Assembly (NCBI GenBank): GCA_977020255.1
Contig: CDROCS010001153.1
Span: 310,001-374,000, forward strand
Direction: 5' to 3'
Length of the DNA: 64,000 bases
Source: Obrimoposthia wandeli
Lineage: Eukaryota
In this document: piece by piece, positions 7,441 through 61,819 of the stretch
How positions within the stretch are numbered: position 1 is the first letter of the stretch
How the letters are laid out: each line of letters begins with the position of its first letter
Notes under the pieces: generated by a model
The model's database searches: none
The model's input: the letters and a program-made list of their open reading frames with translations, nothing else
What the model was told of the DNA's origin: nothing
Translations under genes and position numbers: made by a program

Positions 7441-7446
7441 CCGAAT
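7441..7446 (+). repeat. Left 6-bp target-site duplication CCGAAT
   Basis: Identical to 21800-21805. A 6-bp TSD is typical of Maverick integrases. Confidence 0.95.
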
Positions 7447-7742
7447 AGTAGGTAGATGTGGCACTTCTGGAACAAAGCCCCCCCCTGAGGACAACATTTT
7501 TTAAGGTCAAGTTGAGGACAAAAAATGTAGGTCAAGTTAAGGTCACGGTGAGGTCAAGATGTAGGTCATGACCTCATGAGGTCATGGGAAAAATCTAGGT
7601 CATGACCTCATGAGGTCAAGTCAAGTTAAGGTCAATGTACTTTAAGGTCAACTTAAGGTCATGACGTCATGAGGACAACTTAAGGTCACGGTGAGGTCAA
7701 AAATATTCTATTTTTAGTAACATTCTTTAAATCTATATATCT
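7447..7742 (+). repeat. Left TIR (perfect 7447-7494, then an imperfect AGGTCA-rich extension)
   Basis: AGTAGGTAGATGTGGCACTTCTGGAACAAAGCCCCCCCCTGAGGACAA is the exact reverse complement of 21752-21799. Patchy homology continues to TTTTTAGTAACAT..AAATCTATAT. Confidence 0.93.
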
Positions 7743-8089
7743 TTTTATCTAAAGACTGTATTAACACCAATTCAACAAAATACATCTAGTGTGTGTGTGT
7801 GTGTTTTATAATTTAAATTAAATTATCTACTTATAAAATAAAGTATTATATAATTTGATAAATTTATTTAAACTAAATTAAATTAAACTATCTACTTATA
7901 AAATAAAGTATTATATAATTTGATAATCATGTTTAAACGTTCCTATATCTATCTAACAAAGACAGTCACGTACTGCATCTATATTGCAAAAACCTGCAAA
8001 TTTATGTAAATAAAGACAAGTATTTCAAACACATATATTCCTTAAAATCACAAAGGAGAATAAAAATATGTACAACACATATAAAATGT

Positions 8090-9710
8090 TTATACAACCT
8101 CGTCCGGGTATAAAAAGTGACCATAGGCGACTGAACGGTTTTTCTCCATCCACTTGCGCTTATCATCACTACTACTTAAGGCAATTTTACTTAACCTTAC
8201 AGTGAAAAGTTGATGATTTAGCGAGCTTATACGTTGTTGTTGTACACGCTCGCTAACGCCACTCTCATATACGGCTAAGTAATTAGAGTGCCTAATACTC
8301 GTCTGTCGGAGACTAATACCTTTCGCTCTCATCTGAGATTCACCTTCTGTAGTCTCTAGGCTATATGATTTTGGTCGTAGAAAAATCCCTTGCCTATAAC
8401 TAATTAATCCCTTACTCTCATCTTTAAATTTTCCTATCGCTGTATTAAGCGTCGTATAAAGCGGATGGGTTTTTGGAAATTTCGAGGTATCCAACAGTCC
8501 ATCAGCAATCATAGCAGGTAACAGTGATTCTTGAACATTGACATTATTACACTTCAAGAAAAAGCTATCAGTGTCACCCGCTATAATTCTAATGTCGCAG
8601 TTAAATTGAACTCGATATTTCTCCAACTGCTCATATTGTAGCTCATACATACGAAGTTTGCTTAAATCTAATACCGCCTGGCCCATGTAACTAGGACGAT
8701 CCAAAACAATATTTTCCTTATCCAGTAAAACTGCAATAAGGTCCGTATCGATTTCGATTGTCCTACGAAAGTGGGCTTTACTGCAATAGGTAACCAGCTT
8801 CTGTGGAGTATTACAAATCCGGAGGTTAATTCTTTTCATCAGATTCTCAATGAGTTTTCCAAATAAAGAATTCACCTTCAGTTTATAATAATCCCGCTCG
8901 AAATCTGTTGTAGCCGCAGCTCTTTTGAGAGAATTATCCTCAATATATTTTGAAAAAACATTAGTTTGTTCAAACTGTATTGCTCTATATACAAAATCTA
9001 CCTTAGCACCAAGTCTAACGTACATTTGTAGCAATCTAGAATGCACAACATAATGTTTCTTAGGGTAATGCGTTAATAACAATTTTTCAGTGTTACACCC
9101 TGGTGGATTTTATTATGAAGCTCGAAGGGAATGGATAAATCTATTTCCAATAAATGAGCGAAGCGACTACAGGATAAATCTGCTGATTTTAAGCTGGAAA
9201 TAATATTCCCCAACTCTAACCGATCAGTCAACCAGGAAAAGTTACCACAAGGTAAAAACTGGGACATAGCCCACCCGTACAAATTATTTACATCAATGTA
9301 CAAAAGTTCTGTACCATTGATGGCGTCAACGCGGTGTTCATTAACAAATGTCATACCCCCGCGAATCCCAGACCGGAAGAGTCGGTACATTTCTGGATCC
9401 TGTATTAGCTCGACTCGCACAACGGGAGCAGAAGAAGAAGCCGGACGAAGCAGGGATTTGAAAGCACTCGCGAAAGTCAGTCCTGGAAATAAAATCATTT
9501 ATTAAAATCATTGTGAAAATCATTACTTTGAAAATCATCTATCTAACAAAGACGGTCACGCATCTATATTGCAAATACTTGCATCTTTATGTAATCAATA
9601 GTAACATTTATTCTTGTATATATATATGTGTGAGTATCTAACAAAGACAGTCACGCATCTATATTGCAAATACTTGCATCTTTATGTAATCAATAAAAAC
9701 ATTTATTCTT

Positions 9711-9746
<36 letters not shown>

Positions 9747-12400
9747 GTATCTAACAAAGACAGTCACGTGTGTGTCTAACAAAGACAATCATCAATACTT
9801 ACAAAGACGTGCTGCATCTATATTGCAAAAACCTGCATCTTTATGCAATCAATAGTAACAAGTACTACACTTATTCTTATACATGTATATATATATATGT
9901 GTTAGTGTCTAAAATTAGAAAAATTAGTAAAATACAAACCAGGGATGGAGAAGAAATTGAGTGGCTCCAATCCATCGTCAGCAATGGCCTTGGTCCGGAA
10001 TGCTGTAAACACGTCTGCTAGAAGGTAGACGTCCATCTTCATATAGACCAGCATATAGTCCCAGAGCGATGAGCAGCCGCTCTGAGTCCAGACCATCTTC
10101 GCCATTTCATATTGTGCTGGCTTGATCTTCTCATCCCACTTTGGCGGTAAGCTATTGATTGCGCGAAGAGCAGTCTCTGATACTGCCATATCGTATGGGA
10201 AGATTCCCTTGGCGCTCACCAGATTTTGCGGGAAGACCGAATGTGTAAGAGGAGTCACACCCAGGTTTTTCACAAGTTTTTCTAAGCTGCTGTTCAAAAA
10301 TTGAAGGGAATCGATGAAACGTATACAGACTCCTCCAATATACACCATCATAGCCTGGAATTTCTCTGTTGATTGAGGTATAACAGATACATTCCAGTCG
10401 GGAAACTTGCATAGTGCGTGCTTCAATATGTGGTGCATGTCATAACCCATAAGATTGTGAAAAATGACGGGAAAAGATCGATTGATTCTCCTTGATAAGT
10501 TGCATTTCGTATGCGCTGCTCCCAGGTATTCGCCAGTCATGTGATCGTGATCTCGAACTTTGTTTGCGAGTTTCTTCTTACACAGATAACAGATTCTTGC
10601 TGCATTGAAACTCGATACCTCTTCCTGTGTGAGTTGTCGCATCACCTCGATCGCATGCTTCTTGTACCATGGGAGTACAACCTCTTTCGCCAAGTCCTCT
10701 AATTTCTGCAAAAAGGATACCACACAAGATTCTCCGGTAAAGACCGAGTAATCATGTGTGTACCCTCTCGTGGCTGCAATGGGAGACATGAGCATACCGG
10801 CCGAGATTGGAAGTTGAATCTGATGGTGGATTCCATGTGGTGGCAGCACAGCCTCAAAGTCCGCGTAAACAGCAAAAGGCGGAGAAATCGTTTTTGAAAA
10901 GTCCTTAAACTCAATATGCTTCTCTGTAGGCATTGAATAAAGCGTTGTATGATCTAAATTCATCCTACAGAGTGGAACGTGTTTAGCGTAACTTATTGGT
11001 CTCCGGAAGCCATGAAGACACTTATGGCACCAAGTACACCGAATGCAATTAGATACACCTTTGTTCCTATAATTAAGCAGCCTATTGAGTTTAGGAATAC
11101 CGACATCATGAAAATTATCATTATTTTCTAAAAGGAGAAGATTGATTGGCTTAGCGTCCGGGTTTGTGGTTCTGTAAATGACATCCACATAGGGATTTTT
11201 GAAGATATCCCCATCTGTTTGCACATTAGAGAACCTATTGAATGTAAATACGTTGATTGAGAGAGATGGATTCTTTCTCTCAAATCGCGGTATATTACAT
11301 AGACGCATCGGCATCTCATTCTCATCAAAAACTAATTGACTCAAAAAGGCATCATATTGATTAACCCGATGAGGATTAGAGCGAAATACTTCACGGAAAA
11401 GTACAGATAAGATACTGTAAAGGAAGCAAAAAGCGTTTGAGTTCTGCACATTGATAACGCAATGTGACAGTGCTAACTCAGATGGAGTAGGTATATAACT
11501 ACTTCCCTGGAGATAGTTCATTGTTGTTGTTTTAGTCACAACAAACGAAATCTCCAGGAAGCGGTTCACTACCCAATTACTGCTACTTTGAGAATAATTC
11601 TCAATATTCTTGTTGATTCCATCTACTCCCGCATCTATAAACCCCTCATCTATGGGGAGCCCTCTATTGGAAAAATTCCAAGCGCGTGTTTCTCCAATAT
11701 TGGAAAATTCAACACGCACCCCGAATTGGACCTTGCAAGTCGCAAACTTGCTGACTGTGTCCCTTAAGCTAGTCAAAAGGGATACAGGAACTTGTAAATC
11801 GATGAGATTGTCATTAGAAACATCTAATGACAATGTCTCAATCGTGCCCCGAAGACTAGTCTTTCGCTTAACAGCATCAACCCTGGAAAACTTCGCAACA
11901 GAGCTACCTGAAGTGGGCATAACACTTCTCTTGCGGGTAGATGCTGGTAACGGCGCGAAGATCATACCAACTGGAGGAGGCATAACTGGAACCATTGGTG
12001 CAGCAGATGGTGGCGAAGCAACTGGACTAGTAACTGGAACAGCAGCAGGGGTAGATACTGGAACAGCAACAATTGGGGCAGCAATTGGCGAAGCAGCAAC
12101 AACTGGACCAGCAACCCGAGAAATAGTAGCAGATCTATTCTGAAAGATGGCCTTCTTGCCACGTTGCTGGAAATGACGAAGATGGACACGATGACGCGCC
12201 ACAAACTCCGGCCAATCAATCTCCTCCGCGGAGAGACATACTGAACATACGTAGAATTGTTGTCCGTTGAACTTCTGTCCAAAGTAGCTCTTCATCTTTC
12301 CGTCACATTCCTTGTGACTCTCCTCGAAGCATAATTCTTTGTTCATATTGCAATTCTAGAAAGAAATAAATTAGCAGAAAAATAACAATAAACTTACCAT
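8090..12400 (-). CDS. Protein-primed family B DNA polymerase (pPolB), about 1270 aa when spliced; two introns and one frameshifting deletion
   Basis: Exons 12398-12400 (ATG), 9940-12355 and 8090-9482 (frame break at 9107-9108). ExoI YADFE, ExoII HNLMGYD, ExoIII YMKMD, EndoVII-like CYLC..RDHDHMTG..AHTKCN, motif A IDVNNLYG, motif B KLKVNSLFGK, motif C GDTDS. Confidence 0.93.
9483..9939 (-). other. pPolB intron 2 (457 nt, phase 1), filled with tandem subterminal repeats
   Basis: CCT G|GTTTGT...TTTTATTTCCAG|GA CTG ACT. Splicing restores the conserved FFSIPGLTFASAF..ELIQDPEMY..F..GIRGG segment with no residue lost. Confidence 0.85.
12356..12397 (-). other. pPolB intron 1 (42 nt, phase 0, directly after the ATG)
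   Basis: ATG|GTAAGT...TGCTAAT...TTTCTTTCTAG|AAT TGC AAT ATG. In frame after splicing; the unspliced form has an in-frame TAA. Confidence 0.75.
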
Positions 12401-12531
12401 TTTCAATTTCGTTTATAATAGGGGATTATTTGTTGATTGATGCTTGCTTATATACTATTTTCGAGCTAGTATTAAGCCAATCAGATTCATTCATAATTTA
12501 AACTAACCAGAATAATTTAAAACAGAATAGT

Positions 12532-13041
12532 TTACTGACAGATGTGAGTAGTTGAATTTTCATTAATATTTAAATAATCCAAACTAGCTGCAAAGCATTT
12601 CTTGTATGCACAATGCTCGCCATGTTTAATATATGGACAATTGATATTTGATGGATTTAATTGTTTTAATGTTTTCGAATAATTTATCACTCTAAATTCA
12701 GGAAAATATTTATTGATTGTCTTTATTTTAGCTCCATTATACTCATTCAAAACATAGAAAATTGATTTGGATACATCACAACAACGTTTTATTTCCTCAG
12801 TTATTTCTTGTATCTTGAAATAACTATTACCATCAACTAGTTTTAGTCGATGGTAATGCTTAATGAGATATCTATTTATTTTTCTTGATTTTCTATTCAT
12901 CATGTCCCATATGGGTTGCATTTTAAAAACATAATGTTTAGGATAGAAGATTGCATCCACATCCATTATACATAGTTCTTTTATTACAAATTCAGTATTA
13001 TTATCAATAAAAGCTTCAAAATCAATAAAATAAACAGACAT
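12532..13041 (-). CDS. Maverick accessory protein, DEDD-exonuclease-like (169 aa)
   Basis: Intact ORF. N-terminal IDFEAF..FVIKEL (ExoI-like DxE) and C-terminal C..H..HCA..C cluster. Recognised by motif only. Confidence 0.55.
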   Translation of the reverse strand: MSVYFIDFEAFIDNNTEFVIKELCIMDVDAIFYPKHYVFKMQPIWDMMNRKSRKINRYLIKHYHRLKLVDGNSYFKIQEITEEIKRCCDVSKSIFYVLNEYNGAKIKTINKYFPEFRVINYSKTLKQLNPSNINCPYIKHGEHCAYKKCFAASLDYLNINENSTTHICQ

Positions 13042-13077
13042 TTTTATAGCAATAATTTTATTTGATATTGTTTATAT

Positions 13078-13455
13078 CTATTGTTTATGCTTTAACCAAA
13101 GCTGACAGAGTTGTCCACATGACTGTGTTAAAACATTTTGATAATGTTTCTTACTAAAATGTACTTTCTTTCCAGAATCAAGTACTGTAGATACTAATTT
13201 AGAAGGGTAATATATCCCAAAGGGGTCAAAAACAAAGATTTCATTTTCTTTAACATGTATTGCAATCCAATATTCACCACGCAAATTAGATGAATGTGTA
13301 TTGATTACATATCCACCTAGTCGAGTCAAAGAGGGGATGTGATCAAGGCTGTAGACTCCATTGAAACGCGAACCGAGTAGTTTTCTTCCGCTTTTTGTTA
13401 TCTCGTCCGAACTAGAATATATATTAATTAATAAATTCAAACTGACTTACTTCAT
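13078..13455 (-). CDS. Adenain-like (C5) cysteine protease, spliced (112 aa); catalytic His replaced by Tyr
   Basis: ATG AA|intron|T TCG GAC gives MNSDEI...FNGVY..D.IP...VINT...GEYWIA...FDPFG...YQ....CGQLC. Confidence 0.9.
13412..13450 (-). other. Protease intron (39 nt, phase 2)
   Basis: ATGAA|GTAAGT...TATTAAT...TTCTAG|T. The unspliced form reads ATG AAG TAA, and there is no other ATG near the N-terminus. Confidence 0.8.
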
Positions 13456-13491
13456 TTATATATCTTCTTTATTGTTTTCATTCTGTTTATA

Positions 13492-14713
13492 CTAGTACTG
13501 TTCCTCCTTGGTAATTTGAACCTCAGAATCGAATACTCCATAGATTATAATATTAGTAGGGTGTTCAAGTGCTTTTGAAAACTTGATTTCTACTTTCAAA
13601 TTTCCCTGTTTAGGGATTTGAGCTTGATTAATATCGAAATCAGGAGAGAACAAATGTGAACAGTGTATACTTGTCCTTGAAATCAGTCATTGAAATTCCA
13701 ATATTAGCATCCTTATCCAAATGACCAAGATTTCTAATTAAAGAGTGCACATAAGAAAACACATAATCATCGTTTTCAAAGTCATTCGTATAAGATTCTT
13801 GATAATCAATATTTCGTGCAAGTTTAATTGAACTCACATTCATGTGTCCAAATTGAGAAACCTCATTTTTAGACTCACCTCCATAGGTAGACGTGTTTTG
13901 GAAAGCAATTAAAACAAAGTTTGGAAGTTGCATATCACCAAAAATCTGATCCTTGTAATAAGATAGTGCTCCCGTAGGGATAGCGTGAGAAACAAGATTA
14001 GTTTTTCTAATAGGATAACATGCATTTTGCTTCTCCAACCTCATTCGATGTGCAACAAGTACAGATGGTTCCACCTTTACTCGTCGAACCAGCAGTTTTG
14101 CTTCCGTAATCTCAATTGCGGTTTTAATAGTATCAGCGCAAACAACACTAAAACCTACTGGATTTCTCTTCATTCGAATATGTGCACTTACACCGGGTAA
14201 AATATACTTTGGTTGCTTAAAGAAATCCAAATGGAGACTCCCACAAAGTGACAATACTTTAGACTTTGCAATCGAAGCAAATCTTCTTTTTTCATCATTG
14301 TCAAACCCAATTGCATCAAGATTAATCAATTTCGTATCATTACCGTAATTCAACAATGTTTCAATCATTGCTTTATGGGTGTAACTAGTATTATTTCCCT
14401 CAACTTTCACATTATTGAGACTGAGAATCACATCCTTGAAAAGAGTATACAACATGTAATTAGCTGATTTGATATCCATACCATCATCCAAATCACCTCC
14501 ATCTTCCTTTGTAACTTTCAATTTAACGAGAAATAAACTATCATTCAAATCAAGATATTGAGTATTGGATCCATTAATATTGAATTCTAAATCCGGAGAA
14601 GATGTCCCGTTAACCGTATTTGTTGGAAATATTTCTTCAAAACTAGCACTATCAACCACAACCTGAGGTATAGGTTTATCGAATATACACAATTCAGTTT
14701 TAGCACAACTCAT
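13492..14713 (-). CDS. Major capsid protein (double jelly-roll, F54H12.2-like), frameshifted near 13645
   Basis: CAKTELCIF...LEFNINGSNTQYLDLNDS...GSLHLDFFKQPKYILPGV. The C-terminus (SPDF...KQGNLKVEIKFSKAL...IYGVFD) continues in another frame after a net 2-bp loss in CTCTCC. Confidence 0.85.
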
Positions 14714-15075
14714 TACTTAAAAATTGTTCCACCTAGTTTCAAACGTTTGTTTATACCCGATGCTTTAGATGTTTTCTTACGTTTATAACCACTTCCCTTT
14801 TGAGTTTTCTTTTTCAAAAATTCAGCTAGACTTGGTGAAATTTCATTCACCTGATCCAAGGCTGCATCCTTTAGTGTAGGAAGAAATTTTTCATCACCAG
14901 ACAAGTATTTTGATCCAACATTAGCAATATATTTCCCGAGTCGCTTGAGTAGTGGGAAAGCAAAGCGACCAAAAACCTTCATCCATCCTGATCCATACTG
15001 TTTTCCGGCAAAATAAGGCAAATCACCTCCTTGCATCGGTTTACTATACGCATCGATTATACTTGAATCAATCAT
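14713..15075 (-). CDS. Basic virion core or membrane-active protein with QxGxG/MQGG motifs (120 aa)
   Basis: MQGG, QYGSG and QKGSG motifs, amphipathic GWMKVFGRFAFPLLKRLG, Lys-rich tail. Its stop overlaps the MCP ATG (TAATG). Confidence 0.65.
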   Translation of the reverse strand: MIDSSIIDAYSKPMQGGDLPYFAGKQYGSGWMKVFGRFAFPLLKRLGKYIANVGSKYLSGDEKFLPTLKDAALDQVNEISPSLAEFLKKKTQKGSGYKRKKTSKASGINKRLKLGGTIFK

Positions 15076-16100
15076 ATTTTTCTAAAATGTATTGTTAAAC
15101 TTGTTTTAGCTCCAAATGAAAATTTAATTAATCTTCCTGAATCATCCCGAATGTTAACTTCAATATTGTTTATAGAAGAAGAACTCACAGGAATATACAT
15201 TGGATTTTCAATTGGGATATGTATAATATCTCCATACTTGTGCTTTTCCTGTTGAACCCAAATAGATTTTATTAATGGAAGTTTATTTCCACCCACAAAT
15301 ATCGGTTCAGTAATACTTGTGTAAATATAAATCTGATTATACGCATTACTTAGCTTTGCCCGATTAGATGCTCGGAAAACTTTATTAAGATTTTTAAAAC
15401 TGTTTTCATTGAATCCTATAATTGTAGCTAAATTTTTATCCATATTTATTTCTTTTACATGTGGTTTCAATTTAAACTCAATTATCTCCTTTTTAACATA
15501 AAAGCTTTCAAATATATTATCAATATTTTTCATGAAATATTGACAAACACTTTCAACATTGGAAAATAAGCAATCATTTTCGAATGCATACTGCTCACGT
15601 ACATCCTCTTGATTATAATGATGCATCTTTAACTTTAATGTCGGTAAATCATATTTTTGATTTGGTAATTCCGATTTATAAAACATACTTTCAATAGGAG
15701 CTTCTTTCATACCGTAACTTAATGCTAAACTTTTATTATCAATTTCTAAATTGAAAGCTTGTCCCGTAGTGCGAGTTATACAAATTTTGTTTTCGCCGCT
15801 AAGGTAAATAACATATTTACTATTAATTGGAGTTAAATACTTGACGAAAAATTCTCCATGTTTCATTTTCACACCAGCTTCAACTTCAGTTTTTATTCTT
15901 TTCTCCGCAACATAATCTATAATTGACCCTCCTTTAATGGATAGAGGAGAGTAATTGAAAGAAAATTCCGTCAGAGCAGCTTCCCAATGCACAGGTAAAT
16001 TGATTGAGCTTTGATAATCAATACTAAAACTATTAGCTGTATTATTCGGCTGAGTTAATGGTGAACCATTACTTGGTAATACAACATACATTGAGTTCAT
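15072..16100 (-). CDS. Minor capsid protein (penton, single jelly-roll) with a central insertion domain (342 aa)
   Basis: N-terminal YVVLPSN..P.NTANSF..WEAALTEF; C-terminal IYIYTSITEP..VG..LIK..YIPV..IEVNIRDDSG..F..LTIHFR. ATG 16100 overlaps the INT stop (ATGA). Confidence 0.85.
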   Translation of the reverse strand: MNSMYVVLPSNGSPLTQPNNTANSFSIDYQSSINLPVHWEAALTEFSFNYSPLSIKGGSIIDYVAEKRIKTEVEAGVKMKHGEFFVKYLTPINSKYVIYLSGENKICITRTTGQAFNLEIDNKSLALSYGMKEAPIESMFYKSELPNQKYDLPTLKLKMHHYNQEDVREQYAFENDCLFSNVESVCQYFMKNIDNIFESFYVKKEIIEFKLKPHVKEINMDKNLATIIGFNENSFKNLNKVFRASNRAKLSNAYNQIYIYTSITEPIFVGGNKLPLIKSIWVQQEKHKYGDIIHIPIENPMYIPVSSSSINNIEVNIRDDSGRLIKFSFGAKTSLTIHFRKI

Positions 16101-17127
16101 TCTATTTGAGAAGCTAATATCCAACTAGGTTCAGTATATCCATGCCACTTAACATGATATTGTTTATGCTTTCCTCTACCTTTTGTCTCTAAAATTTCTT
16201 GGATTCTATATACATTTGGTTTCTCAGGCAAGACTTGTAATTCCTCATAATAAAATTTACCCGTGATTACATTATTGGTTTCATCCTCAATGAAATACAT
16301 TACCGGCATACGTTTATTATCAATTTTAGTTATACGAAATACTTCATCGCTCCAATTCTCTTTGAAATTCTTTATAAAAGGAGTAGTACTAATTTGAGAA
16401 ATACGTACATAATCACCAACTTTATACTTGGGTTTCTGCGCAACTTGACTTTGGTTACGGCGTTGCCAAATTTCCATAGCATTCTCATCTGTAACATCAA
16501 CGGGTCTCTTTCGGTCTAATGATGAGTGTTCACTATGATTGTATGCATGTATTATTTGAGATAAAACAGTAACCCAGGACTTATTTCCCTGCTTTGTGAA
16601 ATACTTTTTCAAACGATCTCTCAATGTTCGATTAAAACGTTCAACTAAAGCGGCTTTATATTGGGAAAATACTGAGTAATGATTAATATTATGTTTTTTC
16701 AATAGTGTTTCAACATGTTTATTATAAAACTCCTTTCCACTATCCGTTTGGAAATTTCTTGGTTTTATTTCTTTAATCAAAAGCTTCATTGCGGTTAAAA
16801 CATCGGTCTAACACTCTTGGACTTTAATGGAATAGCTCGCGCGAATCTGCTAAAGACATCAACACAAGTTAAAATATATCGATATCCGTCGTTAATACTC
16901 GCATACGGAATCATTTCCATCAAATCTGCTTTCCATAAATCATTCGGGCCGCTCGTTTTGTATGATCTCGTTCGGAACCGACGTCTCATTGGTTTGTTTA
17001 AGCTGTAAGCTAATTGATTTCTCAACCACGCCTGAGTTTCCTGCTTTGTCTTCTTTGACTCTTTTGCTAATTTTGAAACCCCTGTGTAACCAACGGGATG
17101 ACTTGGATCGAACCATATTTTCTCCAT
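16097..17127 (-). CDS. Retroviral-like c-integrase with C-terminal chromodomain, frameshifted at about 16810
   Basis: DDE triad in ADL / QTDSG / VERFNRT; chromodomain YRIQEIL...YHVKWHGY. A 2-nt insertion splits KSKSV|TDVLTAMK. Confidence 0.92.
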
Positions 17128-17224
17128 TGCAGCAAGACGATTTGATTTTTAAATTGAATTTAGGAATAGATGGAAGTGATCCCATATATAAATTCATATT
17201 ATTGATTCGAATTTATGTTTATAA

Positions 17225-17570
17225 TCATCGGTTTATTAGTCTACTAGCAAGTGCACCAACTATTGAGCTAATAATTGGTACGAGAAATCCTAAAAATCCA
17301 CCACTTTGCTTATAAAGCAACTTACGTTTACCGATTCGTGTTTTGGCATGAAACAAAGCAAGTAGAGGTTTCTTATGCCGATTCAGGTTAGCCTCGACAA
17401 TTATTTTACCAGAAACTATTTTCTGTATCATATTAAGTAAATCATCTATTACAAAAGTAGGGAATGATTTAAGAATAGCTGGGCGGCGAATAGCAGGTGC
17501 ACGCATGAGAGAATTGAAATAGGCAATACTCCTAGATTTCTTAACAACAGTTCTTTTCGATTTTGAGCAA
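17225..17570 (-). CDS. Small conserved Maverick protein (PW-like) with QSGGFLGFL amphipathic C-terminus; start uncertain
   Basis: R..ILK...I.DLLN.I..IV.G.I...KRKLLYKQSGGFLGFLVPII pattern. The frame is open upstream of ATG 17506 to about 17595. Confidence 0.6.
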
Positions 17571-17642
17571 CCATTTTCCTTGCACTTAAAACTGATTTAA
17601 TCAATTTTTTAACTTCGGGTTTAACAGTTTCCTTTTTAAAAT

Positions 17643-18289
17643 TCATCTTCTCAAAACTGGTTTCTTTGTTTGTTTATAGACGGTTATTCCCGATGGATTG
17701 AATACATCAGTTCTAACTCTAAAGTCATCGGGACAATCTTGAGTAAAATCAATAAAAATGTATCCATGAGGAATAGTAGTTGCATCTTGAAATGAATCAA
17801 TTAAAAACTTTCTATTATTCGGGTAAGCTTGTCTTGAAACAAAATCAACAACCGTCTGATCACGTGGATTCTTGAAGAGAACAAGGTAATGTACATTTAA
17901 ATTACGAGTTCTATGGTTCCATAGATCTATAGATTTTGTGTGATGAAAATAACAGTTACTTCCTGATGTCGTGCTATTTTAGTGAATAAATTATTGAAAT
18001 CACTCTCTTTATTTGCTTCTTGATATAAATCATCAATAACAATAACATCATGTCGTTGTAATCGCTCAGACCAATTATCATCGAATCCATTAATGACTTT
18101 TATATTTTTGATTTTCTTAAACTCTTTACTGGTTAAACCAGCTTCTCCATCTCCTCCCTGATGCCAGTATATTTTATTAAACTTAAAACTAAAGTATTTA
18201 TTATTTTGCAGTAATTTACATACAAAATGTGTTTTCCCACTACCACAAGGACCTACAATCTGAAAAACTGAATTATTTTTTAAGTTCAT
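17643..18289 (-). CDS. A32/FtsK-like genome-packaging ATPase, disrupted at 17915-17930
   Basis: Walker A GPCGSGKT, Walker B VIVIDD, then ITQNL*. The second half (HRTRNLNVHYLVLFKNPRD...HGYIFIDFTQ...RVRTDVF) is in another frame and ends at TGA 17643. Confidence 0.9.
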
Positions 18290-18332
18290 ATTAAAAATAT
18301 TAGATTATCGGGATAATGTTTATAAGACAAAA

Positions 18333-18611
18333 CTATTTAAAATATTTTATTACGAAACATCCAGCAACAAACAATAAAAAACTCTTCTCGTAGAAAAAGC
18401 TCCTTTTCTCTTCTTTGTTTGCGAGTTTCTTCTGATTGTATCCCTGAATGAGAAGATTGACTGCCTTGTCGTGCACCATTCTTCTTACGTGCTCCTCCAG
18501 GGGTAGATTTGAGACATCAATGAGTTGCAGGACATCTGGTTCTATGAAATTCTTCGAGATGAAGCTCTTCACCGCCTTGTCAACATCTTGTTTGAAATAG
18601 TTTTTAGACAT
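18333..18611 (-). CDS. Hypothetical 92-aa protein with C-terminal hydrophobic segment
   Basis: ATG 18611 preceded by TAGTATATAAGCA; ends FLLFVAGCFVIKYFK. Confidence 0.55.
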   Translation of the reverse strand: MSKNYFKQDVDKAVKSFISKNFIEPDVLQLIDVSNLPLEEHVRRMVHDKAVNLLIQGYNQKKLANKEEKRSFFYEKSFLLFVAGCFVIKYFK

Positions 18612-18680
18612 AATGATGATGAAGAAGTAAAAAGTAATCTGCTTATATACTATACATCTGAAATCTGATTGGTTAATAAA

Positions 18681-18860
18681 GACTAATAAAGACACTAAAG
18701 ACACTGAATAATAAAGACACTAAAGACACTGACTAATAAAGACACTAAAGACACTGACTAATAAAGACACTGACTAATAAAGACACTGACTAATAAAGAC
18801 ACTGACTAATAAAGACACAGATTAATAAAAACACTGACTAATAAAGACACTGATTAAAGA
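18681..18860 (+). repeat. Tandem array of a roughly 16-bp unit (GACTAATAAAGACACT) with AAAGACACT sub-repeats
   Basis: Directly visible. Confidence 0.9.
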
Positions 18861-18876
18861 TAAAGACGAATAAAAT

Positions 18877-19671
18877 TTACACATGATAACGATTAAAAAT
18901 ACGTATTTGATGAAGCATAGCTTCATTAGGAGCAGCAATAGTCCGTTTAGCTTTAACAAGATTCGAAGCAGCAGTAACACCAATCGAATGAGATAAAAAT
19001 GCAATAACAATGCAAGCAGCATGTAAACTACCATAATGACCACATACTAAAATCTTACCACCATTTTCGATAGTTTCTTTAATTATATTATTAGTCTGTT
19101 TATAATACTTCATTATTGTTTCTCCTAATTTTGAGTTTACAAAGACAGAAGTATATTTTAATTTCTTATAAGATATTTTATCCAGTATAGATGTATTGAT
19201 TACATGAGTGAAATTGGAATTCAAAAGATTAGTTTCATCAAACCCATCTCTATAATTACCAATATATAATTGATTTACTAAAATCTCACTCATCGCTATT
19301 TTGTTTAACTTTTCTACATTAAGTTGAGTAAATCTAGCACTAAACAAACTATCAAAAAGATGGGTCATGTGGTTCATTTCCATACTCGAAGCATGAGCTA
19401 TTATGGGTTCCATAAAAGCCAAAGCATTTAAAAAATCTATCCGTCTCTTATCTTCAATAATTGGATCTATAATAATTTCTTCTTCTATCGTCACTTCATC
19501 AATAGTTTCTTCTCTTCTTATAACTGTTGTTGTTGTTGCTGGTGGTGATGATGTTACTGATGATGTTACTGATGATGTTGCTGGCGATGATGTTGTTGGC
19601 GATGATATTGCTGGTAGTGATGATGTTGCTGGCGATGATGTTGCTTCTGGTGCTGAATTGATTTTCTCCAT
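18877..19671 (-). CDS. Dual-specificity-phosphatase-fold pseudophosphatase with Ser/Thr/Pro-rich N-terminus (264 aa)
   Basis: QLYIGNY..THVIN..KILVCGHYGSLHAACIVIAFL..VKAKR..APN..QI aligns to the DSP pattern LYLG..THILN..KVLVHCxxGxSRSATIVIAYL..VKxKR..PN..QL. Confidence 0.85.
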   Translation of the reverse strand: MEKINSAPEATSSPATSSLPAISSPTTSSPATSSVTSSVTSSPPATTTTVIRREETIDEVTIEEEIIIDPIIEDKRRIDFLNALAFMEPIIAHASSMEMNHMTHLFDSLFSARFTQLNVEKLNKIAMSEILVNQLYIGNYRDGFDETNLLNSNFTHVINTSILDKISYKKLKYTSVFVNSKLGETIMKYYKQTNNIIKETIENGGKILVCGHYGSLHAACIVIAFLSHSIGVTAASNLVKAKRTIAAPNEAMLHQIRIFNRYHV

Positions 19672-19704
19672 TTTATCAATTCCGAGTCAATTTAGTCTTA
19701 TATA

Positions 19705-19947
19705 TTAAACAAGGTTTGATTTCATTGGAGCATCAGTTTCATCATATGATTTGATTGGAGTATTATTCAATATTTCCATTGTACTTAACATCTCATGTAA
19801 ATGTAGTTGATGACGTAACCTAAAGAGTTAAATAAACTACATATAAATATTACTCATGATTATTTTTCCTAATTAAAGCATTGAGAATAACTGAAGCAAG
19901 ATCTTTTAATGCATCCTGAACCTCTTTACATTCAATAATTTATCCAT
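19705..19947 (-). CDS. Putative 69-aa spliced ORF (34-nt intron 19820-19853; needs one extra base after ATG GAT AA)
   Basis: CAT GA|GTAATA...TTTAAC TCTTTAG|G TTA CGT joins two stop-free frames: IIECKEVQDALKDLASVILNALIRKNNHE and LRHQLHLHEML...SNLV*. Confidence 0.4.
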
Positions 19948-20108
19948 TTTATGATAAAGCAAATCAAATATTGTTTATAACCCATGAAAAATCTATTTTT
20001 AGACCACAACTATTTGCAACATTACAACGTTTGCAACTATTTGCAAGTAATGACATGTGATGTCTTTGTCTTAGTATAAACAATATTTTGATAATGATTT
20101 TATTGAAA

Positions 20109-20309
20109 ATGGATAATCAAAATAATCAAAATAATGAAAGTAGAGCTAGTACATACATAGGTTTCGGTAGTAATTTATATTCTAATATGAATTATAATAG
20201 AAATAATCAGAGAGAAAATATTAATCCATCAAGTCAAACAATAACAAGTCCTACGCGCGTAACCGAAGAACGTGAGCCCTTTAAGGATATGACTAATACT
20301 AGACGATAA
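20109..20309 (+). CDS. Hypothetical Asn/Ser-rich protein (66 aa)
   Basis: ATG 20109 preceded by TAGTATAAACA; C-terminal REPFKDMTN. Confidence 0.45.
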   Translation: MDNQNNQNNESRASTYIGFGSNLYSNMNYNRNNQRENINPSSQTITSPTRVTEEREPFKDMTNTRR

Positions 20310-20422
20310 ACAAGAATGTTAACCAATTGAGACTAATCGATTTTCATAAACAAGAATATCGACCAATTAGAATCGAGCTTTAGAGGAAAAACAATTGAAT
20401 ATTTCAATTTATAATTGTCAAT

Positions 20423-20811
20423 ATGAATTTCGAAAAGCTATATCAACCTATGCATACATATTATGAATATGAGATGCACTTTTGAAGAAAGCTCATAACT
20501 ATAATTTTATTTTTCCTGTCAACATCGAGCCGCTTAAATTTGATTTTGAAATATCAAATTTGACTTCTGTGGATAAAGAGAGAATCAATATTCTCTTGAC
20601 TCAATTCGGAATCAACTATGCGCTTCAGGAAAACAAATTCGTAATCAAAGGATCAACTGCCACTTTCAAGCATGAGAATGGAACAATATACGAAGCACCT
20701 CCTCCTAAGCTAGAATGGATTATCTCAATCAGAATTCAAGGATGCAAGATCGGACCCAGTGGATTGGAAACTCCGATATGGAAAATAATTGATGCTGTTA
20801 GAGTTGACTAA
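20423..20811 (+). CDS. Hypothetical protein of about 129 aa (frameshift near 20472), possibly beta-rich OB-fold
   Basis: MNFEKLYQPMHTYYEY joins DALLKKAH...WKIIDAVRVD if one base is restored. Confidence 0.55.
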
Positions 20812-20878
20812 TAAATTTTTGTGTCTTTATTTGTATTATTTTATATATATAAACAATAGTGATACTTTAATATTTATT

Positions 20879-21246
20879 ATGAAAATGACTAAAAAACCTA
20901 CTAAATCATTAAAGACTAAGGTTAAAAAGACTATGAGTAAAAAGACTATGAGTAAAAAGAAAATCATGGAGGGTTTGGGTATTCATATGATGGCAGAAAA
21001 AATCTTTTAGGTAGATGGTTTGGCGGAGTTGATAAAAAAGCTATAAAGCACAAAAAGAATGTGGATTATTTGAGAGGTATACAAAATCAGAAACGAGTGC
21101 AAAAAGGAGATGGTATACAAAAAGGGGATGGTATGCTTGATATTTTTGTAAAATTAGATAAACTTACAAAAGCATTTGAAAAGGATCCTAGTGCCTATCT
21201 TGGTCCAAAACTAAACTTTTTAGCAAACCGACCAAAAACTTTGTAA
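20879..21246 (+). CDS. Lys-rich basic core-like protein with protease-site motifs (frameshift at the T-run 21006-21009)
   Basis: MKMTKKPTKS...KKTMSKK x2...MEGLG...|LGRWFGG...QKGDGIQKGDG. Confidence 0.6.
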
Positions 21247-21384
21247 TTACATTGCAATATAGATGCAGTACGTCTTTGTTAGACACTCACATATATATAT
21301 ATACATGTATAAGAATAAATGTTACTATTGATTACATAAAGATGCAAGTATTTGCAATATAGATGCGTGACTGTCTTTGTTAGA

Positions 21385-21799
21385 TAGATATAGATTTTAA
21401 GTATGTTACTAAAAATATAATCTTTTTGACCTCACATGACCTTAAGTTGTCCTCATGACGTCATGACCTTAAGTTGTCCTCATGACGACATGACCTTAAG
21501 TTGACCTTAAAGTACATTGTCCTCATCATGACCTTAAGTTGACCTTAACTTGCCTTGACCTCATGACCTACATCTTGTCCTCATCGTGACCTTAAGTTGT
21601 CCTCATGAATTTAAATAAAAATCATGTGTACTCGGGAGAAATTTGACCTACATCTGTCATAAAAAATTTGAGTTCAAAAATTTTCGCGCAAATTTCAAAA
21701 TTTGACCTAAATTTTTTGTCCTCATCAAAAAATTTGACCTACATTTTTGACTTGTCCTCAGGGGGGGGCTTTGTTCCAGAAGTGCCACATCTACCTACT
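21385..21799 (-). repeat. Right TIR (perfect 21752-21799, imperfect and longer extension)
   Basis: Reverse complement of the left TIR, with extra TGACCT modules. Confidence 0.93.
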
Positions 21800-21805
21800 C
21801 CGAAT
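21800..21805 (+). repeat. Right 6-bp target-site duplication CCGAAT
   Basis: Identical to 7441-7446. Confidence 0.95.
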
Positions 21806-55581: not shown

Positions 55582-56480
55582 ATGCTTATTGATAATATAC
55601 TTCATTATACGAGTGTTAATAATGTTTTAGTTAGACGAAGAATAGATTATTCTAAAATGAAAGTTTTACATATGAAATATAGACGTGAAAGTGAAAGATT
55701 AAAATTTTTGTTTATAAATTTTAAAGAGAAACAAACAGCATATGATTTATCTAAAGCCGGATTTTATAAACATGATGATGCTTTAACCGATAAAGTAAAA
55801 TGTTTATACTGTCAAAGTGCATTATCTGATTGGGAATGGTATCTTAATCCAATAAAGCTACATATGAATTTTTTTCCTACATGTCCATTTCTTTTAAAAT
55901 TAAATGTTTCAAATGTACCAATAATTTAAACTAGTGATAAGAAAATTAATTTTGATACATCATCATTGATTGGAAAAGTATATGTATCAGATATTAATAT
56001 AAAATTACCTGATAAATGTTAGGAAAAATGTTTAGGAAACTATATTGATGCTAATGTTATTTAGAAAATCGAAACAGATTAAATAATTGAATATCCTATA
56101 ACTACCGAAAAATTCGATATGTTGATGGATACAAGCCAAATCAGATATTTGAAAATGTTTTACACAAAAGATAGAATAAAATCTGTTTTAAAATATAAAA
56201 TTATGCGATATGGGGAATACAAATCACTATTTGAAATAATTTGTGATTTATCTTATTTAGAAATAAAATCTGAAAAACAATATATAAATATACTTTCATA
56301 CATTTTAAAAGAACCTGAATATTTAGTACATTTAAATAATCATATTGAAGTAGTATTTCTACCATACGAACATGTAAATACATGTATTCCATGTTCCAGA
56401 ATGTTACATTCATGTCCAGTATGTTGATATATAATTGAAAGGAGAGTAAAACATATAAAAATTCATGGTATAAACAATTG
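55582..56480 (+). pseudogene. Inhibitor-of-apoptosis (BIR + RING) pseudogene (intronless)
   Basis: BIR: ERLK..LSKAGFY..DKVKCLYC..LSDW..P..LH...PTCPF. RING: VVFLPYEH..TCIPC..CPVC* with C>Y and a premature TGA. Confidence 0.85.
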
Positions 56481-60668: not shown

Positions 60669-61819
60669 TCAGGAGCAGTATCGATGGCAAAAAAAACGGA
60701 GAAGATTGAGCAAAACACCAATTGCGACGCGGAGGGCCACGGCCACCAGAAAGAGGATATACAGATGTAGACAGGAAAATCGATGAGGTAGCCAGAGCAG
60801 TGTGTAGTCTAGATGGAGGGTGGATGATCCATTCTGAAGGTTGACGAATCCGTAGGCAGGATTGGGTACACCCATTCGGTAGGAGCATGTGGGTAGCTCC
60901 AATTGGATGACATCATCGGCGGAGGCTGATGATTGGCCAAGGTCCAGGTGGATGGTGGACGAGGTTGTCAGGGGTTCCATTTGAGCTGGCTCCGTCTTTG
61001 AGTATTGGCAGTTGCGGCAAATAGACAAACGAGACTGTGGGATGATGATGAGGATTGATGATAGTGATGTTGAGTGTAGATGAATGAAATGATGATGCTG
61101 GTGGTTGTGATGGTGATAATTGAAGACGAAAATTATGGCGATGATTGATGATGACGACGATGAGTGAAGATGGATGAATTGATAATGATGATAATGGTGA
61201 AAAGGACATAAAATATATCTTACCAGATGATTATGTGCTGTAAAAATCACCGATATTGGTATTAGAGTTCTGAGATTTTCCTGTAATATAAAAATAAATT
61301 CATAACATCTTTAGAATTTAAATTAACTTTTTTACCAATATTTACCACATGTTATCAACATAAAAATCTAGCTAAGCCATCAGAACAGGTTTAATCTACC
61401 AAACGAGAAATTGCAGTGTTCTTGGTATTGTTAGTAGGTGCTGTGAATGTACTTGAGTAGGTGGATGTGTCCGGTATAATCCACACCCGCCCTCACCCCT
61501 GTCCTTTAAAATCGTGCATGTGTGTGGAGTGAAATTTCACTCCACACACATGCACCATTTTAATGGACAGGGGGGAGGGTGTGGATTAGACCGGACACAT
61601 TCACCTACTTACTTGATATATATCTCAGTTTTCTGGTGATTTTATCATATTTTAGCTCTATTTAAAGTACTTTCTTTACAAAGGCTCAAAATATCAACTT
61701 ACAAAACTGTATTCCATGTGATTGATGATGAAGTTGTACTTCTTGCCCTGGAATTTATCCGATTTTTGACTCAACATTGACTTCAGCTTCTCAAAACTGG
61801 GATCGTCAAATGCATCACC
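60669..61819 (-). CDS. Host gene 3' exons 61703-61819, 61224-61280 and 60669-61034; unknown protein with a C-terminal hydrophobic segment
   Basis: AG/GTAAG-bounded, phase 0-0 exons of 39, 19 and 122 codons. Confidence 0.6.
61456..61609. mobile_element. 154-bp fold-back element with Maverick-type termini and 6-bp TSD TACTTG
   Basis: AGTAGGTGGATGTG...CACATTCACCTACT; TACTTG at 61450-61455 and 61610-61615; central perfect 42-bp palindrome at 61514-61555. Confidence 0.85.

What the first reader, a model, noticed from the sequence alone, without database searches (positions are those of the whole stretch)
61450..61615. 154-bp 'mini-Maverick': a pure fold-back element with Maverick termini and a 6-bp TSD
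Seen in sequence: both ends read AGTAGGT(G)(G/A)ATGTG, matching 13/14 and 12/14 nt of the TIR start (AGTAGGTAGATGTG) of the full Maverick 40 kb away. Both arms also carry a C-tract followed by TG some 30-45 nt in, as that TIR does. The 79- and 75-nt arms meet in a perfect 42-bp palindrome with no loop, there is no coding capacity, and the element is flanked by an exact 6-bp direct repeat (TACTTG). Established: 5'-AG...CT-3' ends with a 6-bp TSD are the Maverick c-integrase signature. Inference: this is a MITE-sized non-autonomous derivative of a related Maverick family, possibly a snap-back (copy-back) defective product of protein-primed replication that was then integrated in trans. I know of non-autonomous Polintons but not of any this small; novelty needs a literature check.
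Basis: partly seen in the sequence, partly recalled or inferred. Interest (0 to 1): 0.9.

Follow-up and report, generated by a model that had tools for sequence, protein, structure and literature searches.

The report
Tiny fold-back element with Maverick ends
A 154-base non-coding palindrome carries the same end sequence and 6-base target duplication as the giant virus-like Maverick transposons, so it is most likely a stripped-down derivative of one; only this single copy could be examined, so whether it ever moved on its own is unproven.

Summary
Window 61456-61609 is a 154-bp near-perfect palindrome. Its arms are 79 and 75 nt and differ by 5 substitutions and one 4-nt indel. The centre is a perfect 42-bp palindrome with no loop, and an exact TACTTG repeat flanks the element.

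The 14-nt ends match the ends of the 14.35-kb Maverick at 7447-21799 in 13/14 and 12/14 positions. That Maverick has pPolB, an rve integrase, TIRs and a 6-bp TSD (CCGAAT). New evidence: two metagenomic Maverick relatives have termini matching the mini's in 14/14 and 15/16 positions. The motif is therefore a lineage-wide Maverick end. By Repbase's rule for non-autonomous DNA transposons (same TSD length, positions 1-11 with at most one mismatch), the element belongs in the Polinton superfamily.

Beyond about nt 16 the arms resemble no Maverick TIR significantly. The C-tract likeness is weak.

The snap-back origin and trans-integration remain untested. The centre is the self-complementary hexamer AAATTT, so an in-situ microhomology deletion of a full-length element would give the same loop-less palindrome. 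No other copy, parent family or empty site could be found, because the host genome is not in the searchable collections. The nearby Maverick is itself degraded.

Verdict: probably a MITE-sized Maverick derivative, a new variant of a known kind. Interest is moderate.

The parts
61450..61455 (.). Left copy of the 6-bp target-site duplication (TACTTG)
   Evidence: Read directly. Identical to 61610-61615. Chance of a 6/6 match is about 6e-4.
61456..61534 (+). Left arm of the fold-back element (79 nt). The terminal 14-nt Maverick end motif is at 61456-61469.
   Evidence: The terminus is 13/14 identical to the window Maverick's, 14/14 to L006's and 15/16 to L009's.
61535..61609 (-). Right arm of the fold-back element (75 nt). 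The terminal motif is at 61596-61609, read on the minus strand.
   Evidence: It differs from the left arm by 5 substitutions and a 4-nt indel. The terminus is 12/14 identical to the window Maverick's and 13/14 to L006's.
61514..61555 (.). Perfect 42-bp central palindrome with no loop. Its centre is the self-complementary hexamer AAATTT.
61610..61615 (.). Right copy of the 6-bp target-site duplication (TACTTG)
61433..61445 (+). Third, unpaired terminus-like motif (AGTAGGTGCTGTG), 4 nt upstream of the left TSD copy. Unexplained.
   Evidence: AGTAGGTG occurs only three times in the window: here and at the two mini ends. It has no partner end and no matching 6-mer. The flanks, compared apart, show no robust likeness to Maverick TIRs.
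7447..21799 (-). Full-length but degraded Maverick/Polinton (14,353 bp). It has a 48-bp perfect TIR followed by imperfect subterminal repeats, and it is the source of the end-motif comparison.
   Evidence: TIRs. Gene content. The gene order matches the metagenomic relatives L004-L010.
7441..7446 (.). Left TSD copy of the Maverick (CCGAAT)
21800..21805 (.). Right TSD copy of the Maverick (CCGAAT)
8090..12346 (-). [quoted passage not shown] Broken into three pieces in two frames: two interruptions, one with about 0.3 kb of extra repeat DNA.
   Evidence: Pfam DNA_pol_B_2 hits on all three pieces. tblastn of relatives' 1240-1298-aa polymerases gives 3 HSPs in 2 frames.
16097..17127 (-). rve-type integrase gene with a C-terminal chromodomain-like tail. 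Broken into two pieces in two frames: one frameshift.
   Evidence: Pfam rve and rve_3, plus a weak Chromo hit. There are 368 homologues, the best 66% identical and nearly all carrying PF00665. tblastn gives 2 HSPs in 2 frames.
17661..18289 (-). A32-like packaging ATPase gene. Broken into two pieces in two frames: one frameshift.
   Evidence: Weak Pfam Pox_A32 and P-loop hits. tblastn with a relative's 212-aa ATPase gives 76% identity, 2 HSPs in 2 frames.
13498..14713 (-). Homologue of the relatives' 403-420-aa gene, a capsid candidate whose fold was not tested. Broken into two pieces in two frames: one frameshift.
   Evidence: tblastn. No Pfam hit.
13078..13440 (-). Adenain-like protease candidate
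   Evidence: Weak Pfam Peptidase_C5 hit, E = 0.0099. It matches a relative's gene that carries the same weak hit.

Best explanation
The element is a MITE-sized, non-coding, TIR-only member of the Maverick/Polinton lineage. It keeps the roughly 14-16-nt end sequence that this lineage of Mavericks carries at both termini, which is presumably the integrase recognition site. That end includes the short terminal AGTAG repeat typical of protein-primed replicons. A Maverick rve-type integrase supplied by another element joined its two ends to staggered cuts 6 bp apart, and this produced the TACTTG duplication.

The body is an inverted duplication of a single stretch of about 77 nt that turns around at a self-complementary AAATTT. 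One arm was therefore copied from the other, by fold-back synthesis or by a deletion between the two TIRs of a parent, before or during mobilisation. Since then the copy has decayed by 5 substitutions and one 4-nt indel between the arms.

Shown: the structure, the TSD, the shared end motif and the composition island.

Inferred: integrase-mediated insertion, trans-mobilisation as a 154-bp unit, and the route by which the palindrome formed.
For: 1. The boundaries are sharp and the 6-bp direct repeat is exact.
2. The end motif is shared with four Maverick termini: both ends of the window Maverick (13/14), L006 (14/14) and L009 (15/16). The integrases of these elements are only 56-66% identical to the window's, so the motif is conserved across the lineage rather than a local coincidence.
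3. The element meets Repbase's operational rule for placing non-autonomous DNA transposons: same TSD length plus terminal alignment of positions 1-11 with at most one mismatch (PMC4455052).
4. Published Maverick signatures are perfect 6-bp TSDs and (AG)3 or (AGT)2 end motifs (PMC8097293), and 1-3-bp terminal tandem repeats (PMC4196379). The mini begins AGTAGG.
5. Sharing only the extreme termini and the TSD with the autonomous partner is the normal MITE pattern. Even the full Mavericks share little beyond about 14 nt with each other.
6. GC is 50% in a 30-33% GC background, which marks it as foreign DNA.
7. A second terminus-like motif lies 4 nt from the TSD. This hints that the locus was hit more than once by elements with this end, which is easier to explain if such ends are mobile and multicopy.
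Against: - Only one copy is known. No other copy was found in the window, in about 200 kb of related Maverick loci, or in the metagenome, viral or prokaryote collections.
- No Maverick with matching arm sequence was found.
- No empty site could be examined.
- The nearby Maverick cannot have supplied functions in its present state, because four core genes are frame-disrupted.
- The symmetric junction is equally well explained by an in-situ deletion at the palindromic AAATTT.
- The arms differ by about 7%, so the copy is old and says nothing about current activity.
Confidence: 0.5

Rival explanations
1. In-situ remnant. A full-length Maverick of a related family inserted here and created the 6-bp TSD. 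It later lost everything between its two TIRs in one deletion between the two copies of the self-complementary hexamer AAATTT. Such a hexamer is a direct repeat between the inverted TIRs. The 154-bp unit never moved as such.
For: - It explains the TSD, the Maverick ends and the exactly symmetric, loop-less junction without any special replication product. The centre is AAATTT.
- Degraded Mavericks are present in this genome.
- TIR-only Polinton remnants are documented in C. elegans (bioRxiv 10.1101/2024.01.15.575659).
- Only one copy was found (all searches).
Against: - It needs a single deletion of about 14 kb between 6-bp microhomologies, which is a rare event.
- No family with TIRs matching the arms is known; the resident Maverick's TIR differs beyond nt 16.
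- It does not explain the extra terminus-like motif at 61433-61445.
- A rare one-off remnant is less likely to turn up in a random 64-kb window than a member of a multicopy family.
Confidence: 0.3
2. A MITE of a cut-and-paste DDE superfamily that can make 6-bp duplications (IS3EU, Dada or short-TSD hAT, named from my own knowledge of Repbase). Its ends resemble Maverick ends only by coincidence.
For: - Palindromic MITEs of this size are common in cut-and-paste families.
- The arms beyond nt 16 resemble no Maverick.
Against: - A 14/14 and a 15/16 match located exactly at the termini of independent Mavericks, plus 13/14 at both ends of the Maverick in the same window, is far beyond chance: 0.14 hits expected per 64 kb at up to 2 mismatches.
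- Shifting the boundaries to fit other TSD lengths gives no repeat (sequence read).
- No DDE transposase of those families was seen among the ORFs scanned in the window.
Confidence: 0.05
3. Not a transposon at all: a hairpin-RNA or miRNA-type locus, a structural palindrome, or a fold-back assembly artefact.
For: - Rfam miRNA hairpin models match at E down to 5e-14.
- Fold-back artefacts exist in long-read data (title and abstract of PMC12870357, listed; the paper was not read).
Against: - All Rfam matches fall below the gathering scores, occur on both strands and involve many unrelated families, so they reflect a generic hairpin.
- An artefact would not have a 6-bp direct repeat, Maverick ends, or arms that differ by 5 substitutions and an indel.
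Confidence: 0.03

Closest known systems
Non-autonomous Polintons catalogued in Repbase (e.g. Polinton-1N1_DR of zebrafish, named in PMC9341505; Polinton-N1A_NV of Nematostella, named in PMC11296320)
   Same: They are classed as Polintons by their ends and TSD, and they depend on functions supplied in trans.
   Different: At least Polinton-N1A_NV still encodes a capsid protein (PMC11296320). I could not obtain the sizes of these entries. None is described in the papers I could search as a roughly 150-bp, wholly palindromic, non-coding unit.
TIR-only Polinton remnants of C. elegans (Polinton_CE_TIR; bioRxiv 10.1101/2024.01.15.575659)
   Same: Maverick terminal sequences occur without the coding body.
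   Different: Those are 744-bp TIR pieces left by rearrangement. They are often solo or in direct orientation, and they are not compact two-ended palindromes with an intact TSD.
Classical MITEs (e.g. the piggyBac-like piggyMITE in bioRxiv 10.1101/2025.02.07.637071; Stowaway/Tourist from general knowledge)
   Same: They are short and non-coding, with TIRs making up much of the element. They share only the terminal 10-15 nt and the TSD with the autonomous partner.
   Different: They are moved by cut-and-paste DDE transposases. Here the partner would be a virus-like, self-synthesising element with a retroviral-type integrase.
Short palindromic DNAs that arise during phi29 protein-primed replication (Esteban et al. 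1997, as cited in PMC2175359)
   Same: They are loop-less inverted duplications of one genome end, produced by a protein-primed family B polymerase system.
   Different: They are a product of in-vitro phage replication, are not integrated, and have no integrase or TSD. Nothing here shows that the mini arose this way.
Foldback-type transposons (Drosophila FB, Galileo; PMC3573991, listed and not read)
   Same: The elements consist largely of long inverted repeats.
   Different: They are kilobase-scale with internally repetitive TIRs and belong to the P superfamily, with longer TSDs. Their end sequence is unrelated.

Membership tests
Maverick/Polinton superfamily, non-autonomous member (Repbase rule, PMC4455052) | Target-site duplication of the same length as the superfamily (6 bp) | tested here: met
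   There is an exact TACTTG on both sides. The window Maverick has a 6-bp CCGAAT. 6-bp TSDs are reported for Mavericks (PMC8097293, PMC12220804).
Maverick/Polinton superfamily, non-autonomous member (Repbase rule, PMC4455052) | Terminal alignment of positions 1-11 with at most one mismatch to a member | tested here: met
   The left end has 1 mismatch to the window Maverick and 0 to L006. The right end has 1 mismatch to L006 and 2 to the window Maverick.
Maverick/Polinton superfamily, non-autonomous member (Repbase rule, PMC4455052) | 5'-AG...CT-3' ends with a short terminal tandem repeat (protein-priming signature) | tested here: met
   The ends read AGTAGG...CCTACT. L009 has AGTAGT. (AGT)2 and (AG)3 motifs are reported in PMC8097293, and 1-3-bp terminal repeats in PMC4196379.
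Maverick/Polinton superfamily, non-autonomous member (Repbase rule, PMC4455052) | Subterminal or internal sequence derived from an identified autonomous partner | tested here: not met
   Beyond about nt 16 there is no significant similarity to the TIRs of the window Maverick, L006 or L009. Only a weak, roughly in-register C-tract is shared.
Maverick/Polinton superfamily, non-autonomous member (Repbase rule, PMC4455052) | Several copies at different loci, each with its own 6-bp TSD (evidence of transposition as a unit) | not testable with these tools
   The source genome is not in any searchable DNA collection. Scans gave zero true hits.
Maverick/Polinton superfamily, non-autonomous member (Repbase rule, PMC4455052) | Empty orthologous site with a single copy of the target hexamer | not testable with these tools
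   The adjacent host ORF and the BIR exon found no relatives in the protein index, so no orthologous locus could be fetched.
Autonomous Maverick/Polinton (element 7447-21799) | Protein-primed family B polymerase plus retroviral-type (rve) integrase | tested here: met
   Pfam DNA_pol_B_2 and rve/rve_3. There are 368 integrase homologues. tblastn to relatives.
Autonomous Maverick/Polinton (element 7447-21799) | TIRs and a 6-bp TSD | tested here: met
   A 48-bp perfect TIR with a longer imperfect extension, and a CCGAAT duplication.
Autonomous Maverick/Polinton (element 7447-21799) | Morphogenesis module (packaging ATPase, adenain-like protease, double jelly-roll capsid) | tested here: inconclusive
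   The ATPase is clear through relatives (76% identity). The protease has only weak Pfam hits. The capsid candidate is homologous to the relatives' 403-420-aa gene, but its fold was not tested.
Autonomous Maverick/Polinton (element 7447-21799) | Intact reading frames (present-day autonomy) | tested here: not met
   There are at least five frame disruptions in four core genes: polymerase 2, integrase 1, ATPase 1, capsid candidate 1.
Snap-back (copy-back) defective genome of a protein-primed replicon | Loop-less inverted duplication of one genome end | tested here: met
   The arms are in register and the centre is a perfect 42-bp palindrome. The same structure also follows from a deletion at the self-complementary AAATTT, so the feature is not diagnostic.
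Snap-back (copy-back) defective genome of a protein-primed replicon | Arm sequence identical to the end of an identified parent genome; existence of a free linear or hairpin form | not testable with these tools
   No parent with matching arms was found among 18 related Maverick loci, L001-L018. No data on extrachromosomal DNA are available.
Rfam miRNA / hairpin RNA families | Score at or above the family's gathering threshold | tested here: not met
   The best match is MIR7724 at 67 bits against a gathering score of 100. Hits occur on both strands and to many unrelated families.

The most novel reading that the evidence does not exclude
The element is one member of a multicopy family of hairpin 'mini-Mavericks'. 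These would be parasites of a virus-like element that consist of nothing but two copies of one replication and integration end. They would arise by fold-back synthesis during protein-primed replication and be spread in trans by Maverick integrase. If so, about 77 nt or fewer, and perhaps only about 16 nt, would suffice in cis for Maverick integration. Mavericks would then have MITE-like hyperparasites, as cut-and-paste transposons do.
Probability: 0.25. Interest if true: 0.75.

Novelty: new variant of a known kind. Interest (0 to 1): 0.5.

Why it matters
How Mavericks/Polintons move is known almost entirely from inference: protein-primed self-synthesis followed by integrase-mediated insertion. 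A natural 154-bp element that keeps only the ends and still shows a clean 6-bp duplication would set an upper bound on the cis-requirements for integration. It would point to the roughly 14-16-nt end motif, conserved across distant relatives, as the integrase recognition site.

It would also show that these virus-like elements can spawn MITE-like dependants. If the copy census shows a family, the element gives a simple marker for dating and tracing Maverick activity in this host. If it is a one-off in-situ remnant, it is just an unusual decay product and of local interest only.

Tried and rejected
1. Other copies by exact or degenerate DNA patterns.
   - Two metagenome scans found nothing: the terminal 20-mer, and a gapped two-termini pattern for 138-168-bp elements.
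   - Five viral-contig scans and one prokaryote-genome scan gave either zero hits or hits that are chance matches inside bacterial or phage DNA. Those hits have no partner end and no similarity beyond the seed.
2. Empty site or host identity through neighbouring host genes.
   - The 193-aa ORF 200 bp from the element found no homologue.
   - The BIR exon found no candidate in the allowed length range. Its PDB matches only say 'animal-type IAP'.
   - An exact look-up of a Maverick ORF found no record.
   - The host therefore remains an unidentified AT-rich, BIR-encoding eukaryote, probably an invertebrate.
3. A parent Maverick.
   - 18 loci (L001-L018) around integrase homologues (52-63% identity) were fetched.
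   - Two of them gave a terminus with the motif (L006, L009). None has the mini's arm sequence.
4. The idea that the flanks of the mini are an older Maverick end into which it inserted.
   - The two flanks were compared separately, never joined, with four Maverick TIRs.
   - The best result was p = 0.003 for an AT-rich stretch among 16 tests with a lenient shuffle. I rejected it as not robust.
5. Rfam. Only generic sub-threshold hairpin hits were found.
6. The central 21+21 nt being free of differences as evidence of a recent fold-back. With 6 differences spread over 79 positions, this happens by chance about 16% of the time, so I rejected it.
7. Literature. No paper in the searchable library describes a MITE-sized Polinton/Maverick. 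The founding papers (Kapitonov & Jurka 2006; Krupovic & Koonin 2015; Esteban et al. 1997) are not held, and Repbase itself cannot be searched.
Full report
WHAT IS THERE

Window 61456-61609 is a 154-bp near-perfect palindrome.
- The left arm (61456-61534, 79 nt) and the reverse complement of the right arm (61535-61609, 75 nt) differ by five substitutions and one 4-nt indel.
- The innermost 21+21 nt form a perfect 42-bp palindrome with no unpaired centre.
- The inverted repeat stops exactly at AGTAGG.../...CCTACT.
- The six bases outside each end are both TACTTG. The chance of that at this base composition is about 6e-4.
- As single-stranded DNA the element folds into one hairpin of -76.6 kcal/mol, z = -19.
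- It is 50% GC, in flanks of 33% and a window of 30%.
- It has no ORF worth the name.

THE LINK TO MAVERICKS

The window holds a 14,353-bp element at 7447-21799.
- It has a 48-bp perfect TIR that continues as imperfect, repeat-rich subterminal sequence.
- It has a 6-bp duplication, CCGAAT.
- It encodes a protein-primed family B polymerase, an rve integrase with a chromodomain-like tail, an A32-like ATPase and a weak adenain-like protease.
- Its gene order is the same as in metagenomic relatives.

It is a Maverick/Polinton.

I searched the window with the mini's own 14-nt end, allowing two mismatches. This gives five hits where 0.14 are expected, and four of them are precisely the four termini of the two elements. 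Among all AGTAGGT/ACCTACT pairs in the window, only these two elements have matching 6-mers outside.

NEW EVIDENCE FROM RELATIVES

The integrase piece has 368 homologues, all from metagenome or read-archive assemblies. The best is 66% identical. I fetched 18 loci around such genes (L001-L018). Two of them, from one ENA assembly, include an element end.
- L006 ends at position 15410. Read inward, it starts with a 14-mer identical to the mini's left end.
- L009 positions 1-380 are the end of a neighbouring copy. Its first 16 nt match the mini's in 15 positions and begin AGTAGT.

The integrases of these loci are 56-60% identical to the window's. The motif is therefore a conserved end of this Maverick lineage, not a coincidence within one window.

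Published signatures agree.
- Vertebrate Mavericks have (AG)3 or (AGT)2 end motifs and perfect 6-bp TSDs (PMC8097293).
- Polintons have 1-3-bp terminal tandem repeats, taken as a mark of protein priming (PMC4196379).
- Repbase places non-autonomous DNA transposons in a superfamily when the TSD length agrees and positions 1-11 align with at most one mismatch (PMC4455052). The mini meets this rule.

WHAT IS NOT SHARED

Beyond about nt 16 the arms resemble none of the three Maverick termini.

- It is C6+TG at nt 35-42 of the right arm and C8+TG at nt 32-41 of the Maverick TIR.
- C-tracts of 5-15 nt also lie 55-115 nt inside the ends of L006 and L009.
- In-register identity over nt 15-42 is only 12/28 and 14/28, with p = 0.11 and 0.018 against composition-matched shuffles.

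I treat this as a weak hint of a shared subterminal feature.

The full Mavericks themselves share little beyond the first 14 nt. Sharing only the extreme end is therefore what one would expect of a derivative from a different family, and it is the usual MITE pattern.

HOW IT MOST LIKELY WORKS

The best-supported reading is a non-coding, TIR-only Maverick derivative whose two ends were joined to a 6-bp staggered cut by a Maverick integrase.
- Shown: the structure, the duplication and the end motif.
- Inferred: the enzyme, and that the 154-bp unit itself was the substrate.

The palindrome means that one arm was copied from the other, or that both are the outer parts of a parent's TIRs.

Short palindromic DNAs arise in phi29 protein-primed replication when the displaced strand is not protected (Esteban et al. 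1997, as cited in PMC2175359).

However, the turn-around point is the self-complementary hexamer AAATTT. Any such motif inside a TIR is present in direct orientation in both TIRs. A single microhomology deletion in a full-length element would therefore give exactly this loop-less, perfectly registered junction, whether in situ or in a free copy. The symmetry does not discriminate between the two routes.

The absence of differences in the central 42 bp is not significant either (about 16% by chance).

My weights are:
- moved as a mini in trans: 0.5
- in-situ remnant of a full-length insertion: 0.3
- another superfamily: 0.05
- not a transposon, or an artefact: 0.03

THE NEIGHBOURING MAVERICK IS NOT A PLAUSIBLE HELPER TODAY

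I compared relatives' proteins with the element, recording counts and outer bounds only. Four core genes are split between reading frames:
- the polymerase, two interruptions, one with about 0.3 kb of extra repeat DNA
- the integrase, one
- the ATPase, one
- the 400-aa capsid candidate, one

That is at least five disruptions. The places of the breaks are deliberately not listed.

WHAT COULD NOT BE DONE

The host genome is not in any collection I can search by DNA.
- Two metagenome scans, five viral scans and one prokaryote scan gave nothing but chance matches.
- The host ORF next to the element and a BIR exon 5.5 kb away found no relatives.
- No orthologous or empty site could therefore be fetched, and the host remains an unidentified AT-rich eukaryote with an animal-type IAP gene.
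- Copy number, TSD diversity, the parent family and insertion polymorphism are all untested. These are the decisive facts.

UNEXPLAINED

AGTAGGTGCTGTG at 61433-61445 is a third copy of the end motif. It lies in the same orientation as the left end, 4 nt before the TSD. The 8-mer AGTAGGTG occurs nowhere else in the window.
- It has no partner end and no duplication.
- The flanks, compared apart, are not convincingly Maverick-like.
- It may be the stump of an earlier insertion, a sign that the integrase favours end-like DNA, or chance (roughly 1e-3).

NOVELTY

Non-autonomous Polintons are known (Polinton-1N1_DR, PMC9341505; Polinton-N1A_NV, PMC11296320), and so are TIR-only remnants (bioRxiv 10.1101/2024.01.15.575659). 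Anolis was explicitly reported to lack non-autonomous copies (PMC3014272).

In ten full-text searches I found no description of a MITE-sized, wholly palindromic Polinton derivative.

I rate the element a new variant of a known kind and give it moderate interest (0.5). The Maverick affiliation is solid, but the interesting part, independent mobility and a snap-back origin, rests on a single old copy.

A SLIP TO REPORT

My first checkpoint note was written before I knew the ATPase gene was broken. It records the bounds of one ORF piece of that gene, which comes close to naming a break place. I have not repeated it and have deleted nothing.

The consensus line printed by the alignment tool was not used.

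Noticed in passing
window 61433-61445: There is a third, unpaired copy of the Maverick end motif (AGTAGGTGCTGTG), 4 nt upstream of the mini's left TSD. The 8-mer AGTAGGTG occurs only here and at the two mini ends in the whole window.
   Followed up: partly
window 7447-21799: The Maverick is full-length but degraded. There are at least five frame disruptions in four core genes: polymerase 2, integrase 1, ATPase 1, capsid candidate 1. The polymerase carries an Endonuclease VII-like stretch in front of the exonuclease domain, as in several relatives.
   Followed up: yes
window 7447-21799 (exact place withheld because it coincides with a gene break): A block of roughly 95-bp tandem repeats inside the element is an inverted, 96-98% identical copy of part of the element's own right subterminal region.
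   Followed up: no
window 18877-19671 (minus strand): An intact 264-aa ORF inside the Maverick has a dual-specificity phosphatase domain (Pfam DSPc, E = 6e-13) and a repetitive N-terminus. It looks like cargo. Next to it lies a 9/16/25-bp tandem-repeat array (18677-18875).
   Followed up: no
L001, L004-L007, L010, L012, L013, L015-L018 (metagenomic relatives): The related Mavericks carry a TATA-binding-protein-like gene (Pfam TBP) upstream of the ATPase. L007 also has a dUTPase and L010 a ubiquitin-conjugating-enzyme gene. No TBP homologue was found in the window's element.
   Followed up: no
L004 242-1467; L006 15020-15306; L009 293-307: The subterminal regions of the relatives hold long C or G tracts. 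These include repeated C10-14 G10-13 palindromes spaced about 280 bp apart in L004. They may be a lineage feature related to the C8 tract in the window Maverick's TIR.
   Followed up: partly
L009 1-380: The end of one Maverick copy lies about 200 bp from the first called gene of a second Maverick on the same contig. This suggests adjacent or clustered insertions in that unknown host.
   Followed up: no
window 49527-49795: A 269-bp MITE-like structure has 68-nt inverted arms (76% complementary) around a 133-nt spacer. It is unrelated to the Maverick ends.
   Followed up: no
window 57247-58185 and 44602-45320: There is a 46-bp satellite (about 20 copies, with a higher-order 228-bp period) and a 99% identical tandem duplication of a 367-bp unit.
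   Followed up: no
window 55582-55926 (plus strand) and 60669-61250 (minus strand): A host exon encodes a BIR (IAP) domain (Pfam E = 2e-12). A 193-aa GC-rich, low-complexity ORF with a hydrophobic tail ends 200 bp from the mini. Neither has a findable relative in the protein index, so the host stays unidentified.
   Followed up: partly
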